From NCBI GenBank assembly GCA_964252035.1, contig OZ176207.1: a DNA stretch of 64,000 nucleotides. One strand, 5' to 3'. Numbering within the stretch: position 1 is the first letter of the stretch; each line of letters opens with the position of its first letter. The position numbers and the translations under genes were made by a program. The stretch comes from Podarcis erhardii. Its lineage: Eukaryota. Shown here piece after piece: positions 36,216 to 36,354 of this stretch. The notes under the pieces were generated by a model. That model had not been told where the DNA came from. It did not search any database and saw only the letters and a list, made by a program, of their open reading frames with translations.

Positions 36216-36354
36216 TCCAGTTACAGATAGGTAGCCGTGTTGGTCTGCCATGGTCAAAACAAAATAAAAAAATTCCTTCCAGTAGCACCTTAAAGACCAA
36301 CTGAGTTAGTTCTAGGTATGAGCTTTCGTGTGCATGCACACTTCTTCAGATACC
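36216..36354 (-). mobile_element. Short Penelope-like pseudo-LTR insertion nested in CR1
   Basis: 7-bp TSD CCATAGA (36209-36215, 36353-36359); same 3' end (...CTATCTGTAACTGGA) as the 28156-28339 copy. Confidence 0.85.
36315..36354 (-). ncRNA. Minimal type I hammerhead ribozyme motif (Penelope-associated)
   Basis: Minus strand reads GGUAU-CUGAAGA-A-GUGUG(CAUG)CACAC-GAAAGCUC-AUACC: 5-bp stem I, conserved CUGANGA and GAAA cores, palindromic stem II, minimal palindromic stem III (AGCU), cleavage triplet CUC. Activity untested. Confidence 0.75.

What the first reader, a model, noticed from the sequence alone, without database searches (positions are those of the whole stretch)
36315..36354. Complete minimal hammerhead ribozyme in the PREX2 pre-mRNA sense strand (intron 1)
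Seen: the minus strand reads GGUAU CUGAAGA A GUGUG-CAUG-CACAC GAAA GCUC AUACC. Stem I (GGUAU/AUACC) and stem II pair perfectly and both catalytic boxes are intact. Known: Penelope-like elements carry minimal type I hammerheads with a palindromic, near-absent stem III that are thought to work best as dimers, and an extra nucleotide between A9 and G10.1 is tolerated in natural hammerheads. Inference: because PREX2 is transcribed from this strand, each pre-mRNA carries a potential self-cleavage site (after CUC) about 6 kb into a 29-kb first intron. This could affect nascent RNA stability or co-transcriptional splicing.
Basis: partly seen in the sequence, partly recalled or inferred. Interest (0 to 1): 0.75.

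Follow-up and report, generated by a model that had tools for sequence, protein, structure and literature searches.

The report
Retrotransposon hammerhead motif in PREX2 intron
The hammerhead ribozyme motif is really there and lies on the sense strand of PREX2 intron 1, but it is the standard minimal ribozyme of a short, young Penelope-type retrotransposon insertion and most likely does nothing to the gene's RNA.

Summary
The minus strand at 36354-36315 reads GGUAU-CUGAAGA-A-GUGUG-CAUG-CACAC-GAAA-GCUC^AUACC. A descriptor scan finds it once in the window and in none of 1000 shuffles. The gene context is also right. PREX2 exons 1, 2 and 3 lie on the minus strand, and the predicted cut (36320/36319) is 6,001 nt into the 29,128-nt intron 1.

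The motif heads a 135-137-nt Penelope-like element (PLE) mini-copy (about 36352-36216), running from the hammerhead to the AC-rich reverse-transcription start module. It sits inside an old CR1/L2-type LINE. A second young copy of the family, a fold-back, lies at 28156-28339.

Every hallmark of published PLE minimal hammerheads is present. Helix III cannot close in a monomer.

Most of the 5' strand of stem I comes from the host LINE, so the "complete" ribozyme is a chimera.

In 221-901-nt contexts stem I has a predicted probability of 0.01-0.02, because both of its strands sit in rival hairpins.

Published single PLE hammerheads show no unaided cleavage. Slow ribozyme cuts inside introns do not block splicing. 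A regulatory role is therefore unsupported.

The scan has already reported the same family in other introns of this genome.

The parts
36315..36354 (-). Minimal type I hammerhead motif: stem I, CUGAAGA box, extra A, stem II, GAAA, AGCU, C17. The predicted cut is between 36320 and 36319.
   Evidence: sequence; fold; 1 hit in the window, 0 of 1000 shuffles.
36216..36352 (-). Penelope-like element mini-copy, 135-137 nt, running from just before the hammerhead to the reverse-transcription start/tail module. Its first two bases, TA at 36352-36351, could equally be host LINE sequence.
   Evidence: It interrupts a LINE reading frame. From stem II onward it shares 120 nt with copy 2, differing by 2 substitutions and one 6-nt indel. 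The layout matches Poseidon_Ac (PMC11167929).
36353..36359 (-). 5' copy of the direct repeat TCTATGG. It is host LINE codons tct atg g(ta) and supplies GG and the outer UCUA of the stem I 5' strand.
   Evidence: LINE relatives read ...PLYKSMV.PHLEYCV....
36209..36215 (-). 3' copy of the direct repeat TCTATGG, probably a target-site duplication. The LINE frame resumes here at EYCVQCWSPHL.
36235..36244 (-). AC-rich motif ACCAACACGG, at +100 to +109 from A9. It is the counterpart of the AC-rich stem-loop where the Anolis Poseidon RT initiates (+111 to +118).
   Evidence: PMC11167929 and its File S1.
36350..36369 (-). Rival hairpin A: AUACCAUA-AUUC-UAUGGUAU, 8 bp. It sequesters the stem I 5' strand and is transcribed before the ribozyme core.
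   Evidence: -7.3 kcal/mol, z -4.1, 0 of 200 shuffles as good.
36286..36318 (-). Rival hairpin B, made of PLE sequence that copy 2 also carries. It sequesters the stem I 3' strand.
   Evidence: -8.2 kcal/mol.
28156..28339 (+). Second copy of the same PLE family. It is a fold-back centred on the palindromic stem II and is flanked by the repeat CTGGAATGATTAT. It has no CUGANGA box, and the inverted arm reads AAAA instead of GAAA.
42321..42461 (-). Coding part of PREX2 exon 1 (47 codons, followed by donor GTGAGT).
   Evidence: P-Rex2 chain 9zq7_A residues 6-52, E 6e-16.
13193..42320 (-). PREX2 intron 1, 29,128 nt. Both PLE copies lie inside it.
   Evidence: Exon 2 (13192-13121) matches P-Rex2 residues 53-76. 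Exon 3 (13035-12913) matches residues 78-117. Splice sites were read.

Best explanation
This is an ordinary dispersed copy of a young, abundant Penelope-like retrotransposon family. The copy is only 135-137 nt long. It holds the element's last module, from the minimal hammerhead to the AC-rich site where the element's reverse transcriptase starts copying. It inserted, in the PREX2 sense orientation, into an old CR1/L2-type LINE within PREX2 intron 1. In the element's own life cycle the hammerhead is thought to process multimeric transcripts as a dimer or with help from the element's protein. That step is inferred from the literature. At this locus the motif is a passenger. Helix III cannot form in one molecule. 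No partner motif lies nearby on the same strand. Both stem I strands are predicted to be held in competing hairpins. It therefore most likely does not cut PREX2 pre-mRNA to any relevant extent.
For: The motif and its coordinates are confirmed, and it is not a chance match. Insertion anatomy: the LINE frame ...PLYHNSMV breaks at 36351 and resumes at EYCVQCWSPHL, with TCTATGG repeated on both sides. LINE relatives read PLYKSMV.PHLEYCV. A second family copy has its own flanking repeat and differs at about 2% of sites. The architecture matches published PLE min-HHRs: an extra nt between 9 and 10.1, G10.1-C11.1, palindromic 15.2-16.2, and a short helix I (PMC4209133). It also matches Poseidon_Ac, where the hammerhead is followed about 110 nt later by the AC-rich RT start (PMC11167929). 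Evidence for inertness: predicted stem I probability is 0.01-0.02 in 221-901-nt contexts, while stem II stays at 0.95. The rival hairpins fold at -7.3 and -8.2 kcal/mol. No other hammerhead-like motif with stems exists on either strand of the window. Single min-HHRs were uncleaved in vitro (PMC4209133). The PAc hammerhead needs its protein, and no RNA-seq ends map to its cut site (PMC11167929). Intron cleavage by slow hammerheads does not stop splicing (PMC2995048).
Against: The catalytic core is fully intact and the family is young, so the sequence has not decayed. Here stem I is longer than the element probably supplies by itself: 5 bp, plus 5 more across a bulged U. The copy keeps the whole hammerhead-to-RT-start module. 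In Anolis that module holds the protein-binding region and supported protein-assisted cleavage, so cleavage in cells expressing the element's protein cannot be excluded. The structure probabilities are equilibrium predictions, not measurements. No RNA reads could be examined.
Confidence: 0.82

Rival explanations
1. The copy can cleave in vivo. It would pair with transcripts of other family members to form a double hammerhead through the AGCU palindrome and swapped stem I. Alternatively, the element's RT/EN protein would bind the retained RT-start module. A fraction of PREX2 pre-mRNAs would then be cut 6 kb into intron 1 in cells where the element is active.
For: The core is intact and the helix III palindrome can dimerise. 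A double-hammerhead pairing scheme is nested and evaluates to -27.9 kcal/mol. PLE hammerheads cleave as dimers (PMC4209133; Lunse et al. as cited in PMC6765202). The PAc hammerhead cleaves when its protein is present, and the protein-binding region maps to the first 172 nt after the ribozyme start (PMC11167929), a region this copy retains.
Against: The predicted best homodimer (-47.4 kcal/mol) is a 14-bp intermolecular stem II duplex, not the double hammerhead. Dimer cleavage rates are low even in vitro. No RNA-seq ends were found at the PAc cut site (PMC11167929). Nuclear concentrations of partner RNA are unknown. Both stem I strands are sequestered in context. Even if cleavage occurred, slow cleavage within introns leaves splicing intact (PMC2995048).
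Confidence: 0.12
2. It is a domesticated intronic ribozyme that regulates PREX2, in the manner proposed for the conserved RECK/CTCL/DTNB hammerheads or the CPEB3 ribozyme.
For: It has sense orientation in a long first intron. Precedents exist for conserved intronic ribozymes (PMC6155905, PMC10919898).
Against: It belongs to a young repeat family, with about 2% divergence between the two window copies. It lacks a stable helix III and loop-loop contacts. It does not match the Rfam HH9 or HH10 models. Its stem I is partly accidental flank sequence. The same family sits in many other introns of this genome according to earlier scan notes.
Confidence: 0.02
3. It is a chance match to the hammerhead consensus in non-functional DNA.
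For: No Rfam hammerhead model matches it.
Against: None of 1000 shuffles gives a match. The motif sits at the head of a repeat unit that has a second copy in the window. It carries four features that were not part of the core search and are typical of PLE hammerheads (PMC4209133).
Confidence: 0.01

Closest known systems
Minimal hammerhead ribozymes of metazoan Penelope-like elements (Cervera & de la Pena 2014, PMC4209133; Lunse, Weinberg & Breaker, cited in PMC6765202)
   Same: Type I topology and an intact CUGANGA/GAAA core. One unpaired nucleotide between A9 and G10.1. A G10.1-C11.1 pair. Helix III reduced to A15.1-U16.1 around a palindromic GC (AGCU). A short helix I. It occurs as a single motif in a truncated, dispersed copy.
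   Different: Helix II is 5 bp with a 4-nt loop (a 14-nt perfect palindrome), rather than the 7-8 bp reported for Schistosoma families. Most of the stem I 5' strand here comes from the host flank. This exact sequence was not found in the paper library.
Poseidon_Ac (PAc) of Anolis carolinensis: hammerhead followed by an internal RT initiation site (PMC11167929)
   Same: The same module order: hammerhead, then about 100-118 nt later an AC-rich motif (ACAACAC in PAc, CCAACAC here) where reverse transcription starts, then a short tail. 5'-truncated genomic copies end there. The extra nt after A9 and the 4-nt palindromic helix III are shared (ACGU in PAc, AGCU here).
   Different: It is a different family. 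PAc's ORF starts at A9-U-G10.1 and runs through the module. Here that triplet is AAG, and all three frames are closed within about 60 nt (read directly). Stem II is shorter. No RT/EN ORF of this family lies in the window.
Conserved intronic hammerheads of amniotes (RECK, CTCL, DTNB; Rfam HH9/HH10) and the intronic CPEB3 HDV-like ribozyme (PMC6155905, PMC10919898)
   Same: A self-cleaving-ribozyme motif on the sense strand of an intron of a protein-coding gene.
   Different: Those are canonical, stand-alone active folds with tertiary contacts, conserved at orthologous sites for tens to hundreds of millions of years. This one is a young repeat copy without helix III and has no Rfam match.
Animal non-LTR retrozymes (PMC7229834; bioRxiv 10.64898/2026.07.22.740005)
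   Same: A short non-coding unit derived from a PLE pLTR and headed by a type I hammerhead. Reptile units in the preprint average 176 bp.
   Different: Retrozymes are tandem arrays whose adjacent hammerheads excise a circular RNA. This locus holds one unit only.

Membership tests
Hammerhead ribozyme (catalytic core) | C3 U4 G5 A6 N7 G8 A9 and G12 A13 A14, an A15.1-U16.1 pair, and H17 (not G) before the cut | tested here: met
   CUGAAGA, GAAA, A..U, C17. The descriptor scan agrees.
Hammerhead ribozyme (catalytic core) | Three helices I, II and III around the core within one molecule | tested here: not met
   Helices I (5 bp) and II (5 bp) form in the isolated motif. Helix III would be one A-U pair closing a 2-nt loop, which cannot form. 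It needs a second molecule.
Hammerhead ribozyme (catalytic core) | Match to the curated covariance models (Rfam Hammerhead_1, _3, _II, HH9, HH10) | tested here: not met
   No hammerhead hit at E<=10 on 5 kb or on 91 nt, and none at gathering score on the whole window. This is expected for helix-III-less variants.
Hammerhead ribozyme (catalytic core) | Site-specific Mg2+-dependent self-cleavage | not testable with these tools
   This needs an in vitro assay or RNA end mapping.
PLE minimal hammerhead (min-HHR) | One unpaired nucleotide between A9 and G10.1 | tested here: met
   A36342. The feature is listed in PMC4209133.
PLE minimal hammerhead (min-HHR) | A G10.1-C11.1 pair and palindromic 15.2-16.2 | tested here: met
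   G36341-C36328, and AGCU at 36324-36321.
PLE minimal hammerhead (min-HHR) | A consensus family of copies with compensatory changes in the stems | tested here: inconclusive
   Only two copies lie in the window. Stem II and the stem I 3' strand are identical in both. Scans of the three public collections found no further copies.
Penelope-like element insertion | An ORF with RT and GIY-YIG endonuclease domains | tested here: not met
   The insertion is 135-137 nt and closed in all frames (read directly). This copy is a terminal fragment, so element membership rests on the hammerhead plus RT-start module only.
Penelope-like element insertion | A 3' end at an internal AC-rich RT initiation site or tail about 110-130 nt after the hammerhead, flanking target duplication, and frequent 5' truncation or inverted 5' arm | tested here: met
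   ACCAACACGG lies at +100 to +109 and the copy ends at +128 from A9, against +111 to +118 plus tail in PAc. Flanking repeats are TCTATGG (copy 1) and CTGGAATGATTAT (copy 2), and copy 2 has an inverted arm. Caveat: at copy 1, 12-15 nt of the LINE are also missing at the junction.
Domesticated intronic ribozyme (RECK/CTCL/CPEB3 type) | Conservation at the orthologous intron position across distant species | not testable with these tools
   No vertebrate genome collection or reads were available. The youth of the family argues against it.
Non-LTR retrozyme | A head-to-tail tandem of hammerhead-bearing units | tested here: not met
   There is a single unit and no adjacent copy.

The most novel reading that the evidence does not exclude
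By accident of its insertion site, this mini-copy gained a long stem I (5 + 5 bp) that the element itself does not supply, and it keeps the whole module bound by the element's protein. It might therefore be one of the few dispersed copies that the active Penelope-like element's protein, or family transcripts acting as dimer partners, can drive to cut a host pre-mRNA. That would be collateral ribozyme cleavage of PREX2 transcripts in cells where the element is expressed.
Probability: 0.05. Interest if true: 0.55.

Novelty: new member of a known kind. Interest (0 to 1): 0.12.

Why it matters
As it stands it matters little. It is one more dispersed copy of a known class, the Penelope-like element minimal hammerhead. 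The scan has already reported the same family in several other introns of this genome. Two by-products are modestly useful. First, the apparent completeness of such motifs can be created by flanking host sequence, so stem I should not be taken as evidence of function without checking the insertion boundaries. Second, the retained hammerhead-to-RT-start module is the part that supported protein-assisted cleavage in Anolis. That gives a concrete way to test whether active elements ever cut host transcripts that carry such copies.

Tried and rejected
1. Rfam searches found no hammerhead family: 5 kb and 91 nt at E<=10, and the whole window at gathering score. This reflects how the models are built and is not evidence against the motif.

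2. I looked for further family copies to learn the element's native sequence upstream of CUGAAGA. The exact 27-mer and a degenerate pattern gave 0 hits in metagenome, viral and prokaryote-genome collections. The paper library does not contain the sequence. The native 5' end of the family therefore stays unverified here.

I have no RNA ends, no expression data and no presence/absence data.

4. The upstream complementarity between the LINE (36380-36410) and the PLE tail (36257-36287) is 31 nt at 71%. I considered it as a degenerate fold-back arm like that of copy 2. I rejected this because that stretch aligns in frame with LINE proteins.

5. I considered that TTCTATGGTAT is native element sequence. 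The LINE relatives (PLYKSMV) place tct atg gta in the host, and TCTATGG recurs at the 3' junction. A microhomology-mediated 5' junction (TA or GGTA shared by both) remains possible.

6. I considered copy 2 as a cis partner. Its sense-strand reading lacks the CUGANGA box, has AAAA for GAAA, and would be locked in a 75-bp hairpin.

7. The Lunse et al. 2017 paper is not held. I cite it only through a review.

Full report
**Observation.**
- In hammerhead numbering this gives C3-A9 (36349-36343), an unpaired A (36342) and G10.1-C11.1 closing a 5-bp stem II (36341-36337 / 36332-36328, loop CAUG).
- It continues with G12-A14 plus A15.1 (36327-36324), G15.2-C16.2, U16.1 and C17 (36320). The predicted cut lies between 36320 and 36319.
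- A 5-bp stem I follows (36354-36350 / 36319-36315).
- The isolated 60-nt RNA folds this way at -15.2 kcal/mol (z -3.0). Stem I extends by five more pairs across a bulged U, as UUCUA-U-GGUAU / AUACC-UAGAA.
- A descriptor written for such minimal hammerheads hits once in the window on both strands and in 0 of 1000 dinucleotide-preserving shuffles. The motif is therefore not a chance match.
- Rfam's hammerhead models do not match, even on 91 nt at E<=10. Those models expect a helix III.

**Gene context.**
- An ORF on the minus strand starting at 42461 encodes MTEESKGEG...LEFLVS and is followed by GTGAGT. It matches P-Rex2 (9zq7_A residues 6-52, E 6e-16) better than P-Rex1.
- Exon 2 (13192-13121) matches P-Rex2 residues 53-76. 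Exon 3 (13035-12913) matches residues 78-117.
- Intron 1 is 42320-13193, or 29,128 nt. The predicted cut lies 6,001 nt into it on the sense strand.

**What the motif belongs to.**
- Upstream on the minus strand lies a decayed CR1/L2-type LINE. Its frame reads ...KKANSMLGIIRKGIENKSSSIIIPLYHNSMV up to 36351. Downstream, the same LINE resumes at EYCVQCWSPHL from 36208.
- Two relatives of this LINE found by the word search read ...KKANSMLGIIRKGIENK.ASIILPLYKSMV.PHLEYCV.... The codons tct atg gta (36359-36351) are therefore host LINE. About 12 nt (xPHL) are missing. A foreign piece of 135-137 nt (about 36352-36216) sits in between, flanked by the direct repeat TCTATGG (36359-36353 and 36215-36209).
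- From stem II onward this piece recurs at 28220-28339 on the plus strand, with 2 substitutions and one 6-nt indel over 120 nt.
- That second copy has its own flanking repeat (CTGGAATGATTAT). It also has an inverted arm that meets the direct arm at the palindromic stem II. Both copies lie in PREX2 intron 1.

**Identity of the repeat.** The piece has the layout of the terminal module of a Penelope-like element (PLE).
- In Poseidon_Ac of Anolis carolinensis the hammerhead sits at the pLTR-ORF junction. It has an extra U between A9 and G10.1 and an ACGU helix III (read from File S1). Reverse transcription starts internally, in an AC-rich stem-loop 111-118 nt downstream. An optional tail follows, and genomic copies end there (PMC11167929).
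- Here the AC-rich ACCAACACGG lies at +100 to +109 from A9, and both copies end about 20 nt further on, at CTGTAACTGGA.
- The hammerhead shows the four features that Cervera and de la Pena list as emerging from PLE min-HHR families beyond the search descriptor. The three visible in a single copy are met: a nucleotide between 9 and 10.1, G10.1-C11.1, and palindromic 15.2-16.2. A short helix I is also present (PMC4209133).
- No RT/endonuclease ORF of the family is in the window, and the piece is closed in all three frames. It is a terminal fragment or mini-copy.
- Earlier notes of this scan on other windows of the same genome describe about 130-132-nt units that begin at one fixed base just before the ribozyme. 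My boundaries give 137 nt, or 131 without the 6-nt indel, which agrees. I could not check the genome-wide claim.

**Origin of stem I.** The LINE frame runs through atg gta, so G36354 and G36353 are host-derived. U36352 and A36351 are host-derived or shared by microhomology. The outer UUCUA is also host-derived. Only U36350 is certainly element sequence.
- The "complete" stem I is therefore a chimera of host flank and element.
- With random flank sequence, the four inner bases would pair about once in 128 copies (my estimate, allowing G-U). The additional outer five pairs are rarer.
- A microhomology-guided 5' junction is a possible cause, but it cannot be tested without more copies.
- The junction also combines a 7-nt duplication with a 12-15-nt loss of LINE sequence. 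A simple staggered-cut model does not explain this.

**Likely behaviour in PREX2 pre-mRNA.**
- Helix III would be one A-U pair around two nucleotides, which cannot close in one molecule.
- In the published work, a single PLE min-HHR showed no detectable cleavage, and dimeric or trimeric constructs cleaved weakly (PMC4209133). A review reaches the same view (PMC6765202).
- The Anolis hammerhead cleaved only when the element's protein was present, and no RNA-seq reads began or ended at its cut site (PMC11167929).
- No second hammerhead with stems is present on either strand of the window. The sense-strand reading of copy 2 lacks the CUGANGA box and has AAAA for GAAA.
- In 221-, 421- and 901-nt contexts, stem II keeps a pairing probability of about 0.95, but stem I falls to 0.01-0.02.
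- The stem I 5' strand is taken by an 8-bp hairpin with upstream LINE sequence (36369-36350; -7.3 kcal/mol, z -4.1). That hairpin is transcribed first. The stem I 3' strand is taken by a hairpin of the element itself (36318-36286; -8.2 kcal/mol).
- For two molecules, the predicted optimum is a 14-bp intermolecular stem II duplex (-47.4 kcal/mol). The double hammerhead evaluates to -27.9 kcal/mol.
- Transcripts cleaved within an intron by a hammerhead were still spliced efficiently in vivo. Only a fast ribozyme abolished splicing (Dye et al. and Bentley and co-workers, as summarised in PMC2995048).
- Taken together, an effect on PREX2 RNA is unlikely.

**What remains open.** The core is intact and the family is young. 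The copy keeps the module that supported protein-assisted cleavage in Anolis. Cleavage in cells that express the element therefore cannot be excluded. I give about 0.12 to some cleavage and about 0.05 to the fuller novel reading. Scans of the metagenome, viral and prokaryote collections and of the paper library found no further copies.

**Verdict.** The PLE assignment and the gene geometry are supported, and the proposed effect on PREX2 is unsupported. This is a new copy of a known kind, and the scan has already reported the same family in other introns of this genome. Interest is low.

Noticed in passing
window 28156-28339 (+): Second copy of the same Penelope-like family. It is a fold-back whose two arms meet at the 14-nt palindromic stem II, flanked by the 13-nt repeat CTGGAATGATTAT. 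The inverted arm starts at a different point (in the T-rich stretch) and carries AAAA instead of GAAA. This fits the published finding that the Anolis element's protein extends both target strands.
   Followed up: partly
window 36350-36369 (-): A perfect 8-bp hairpin (AUACCAUA/UAUGGUAU, z -4.1) made entirely of LINE flank plus the first element base. It arises where this LINE copy has an extra codon (PLYHNSMV against PLYKSMV in relatives). I could not establish whether this is chance or a by-product of integration.
   Followed up: partly
window 36209-36215 and 36351-36359 (-): The insertion junction combines a 7-nt duplication (TCTATGG) with the loss of 12-15 nt of the LINE (the xPHL codons). 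A simple staggered-cut model does not predict this. The host bases next to the 5' junction are complementary to the element's AUACC-UAGAA over 9 of 10 positions.
   Followed up: partly
window ~35620-35960 (-), also 40481-40725, 62808-63071, 55700-55964, 5439-5695, 24594-24850, 33085-33313: A repeat of about 265 nt, G+C-rich and SINE-like, is inserted into the same LINE just downstream of the Penelope copy. It has at least six further copies in the window at 73-93% identity. ARAGORN calls no tRNA in it.
   Followed up: no
window 13910-14614 (-): An intact 234-aa ORF resembling, from memory, the C-terminal part of an L1-type ORF2 protein. It lies in PREX2 intron 1, about 700 nt upstream of exon 2.
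   Followed up: no
window 42001-43000: The only CpG-rich kilobase of the window (GC 0.56, CpG obs/exp 0.58). It covers PREX2 exon 1 and its upstream flank and is presumably the promoter. A (CT)n/(GA)n tract lies at about 41700.
   Followed up: no
window 50241-50415: A run of 175 N (assembly gap or masked stretch).
   Followed up: no
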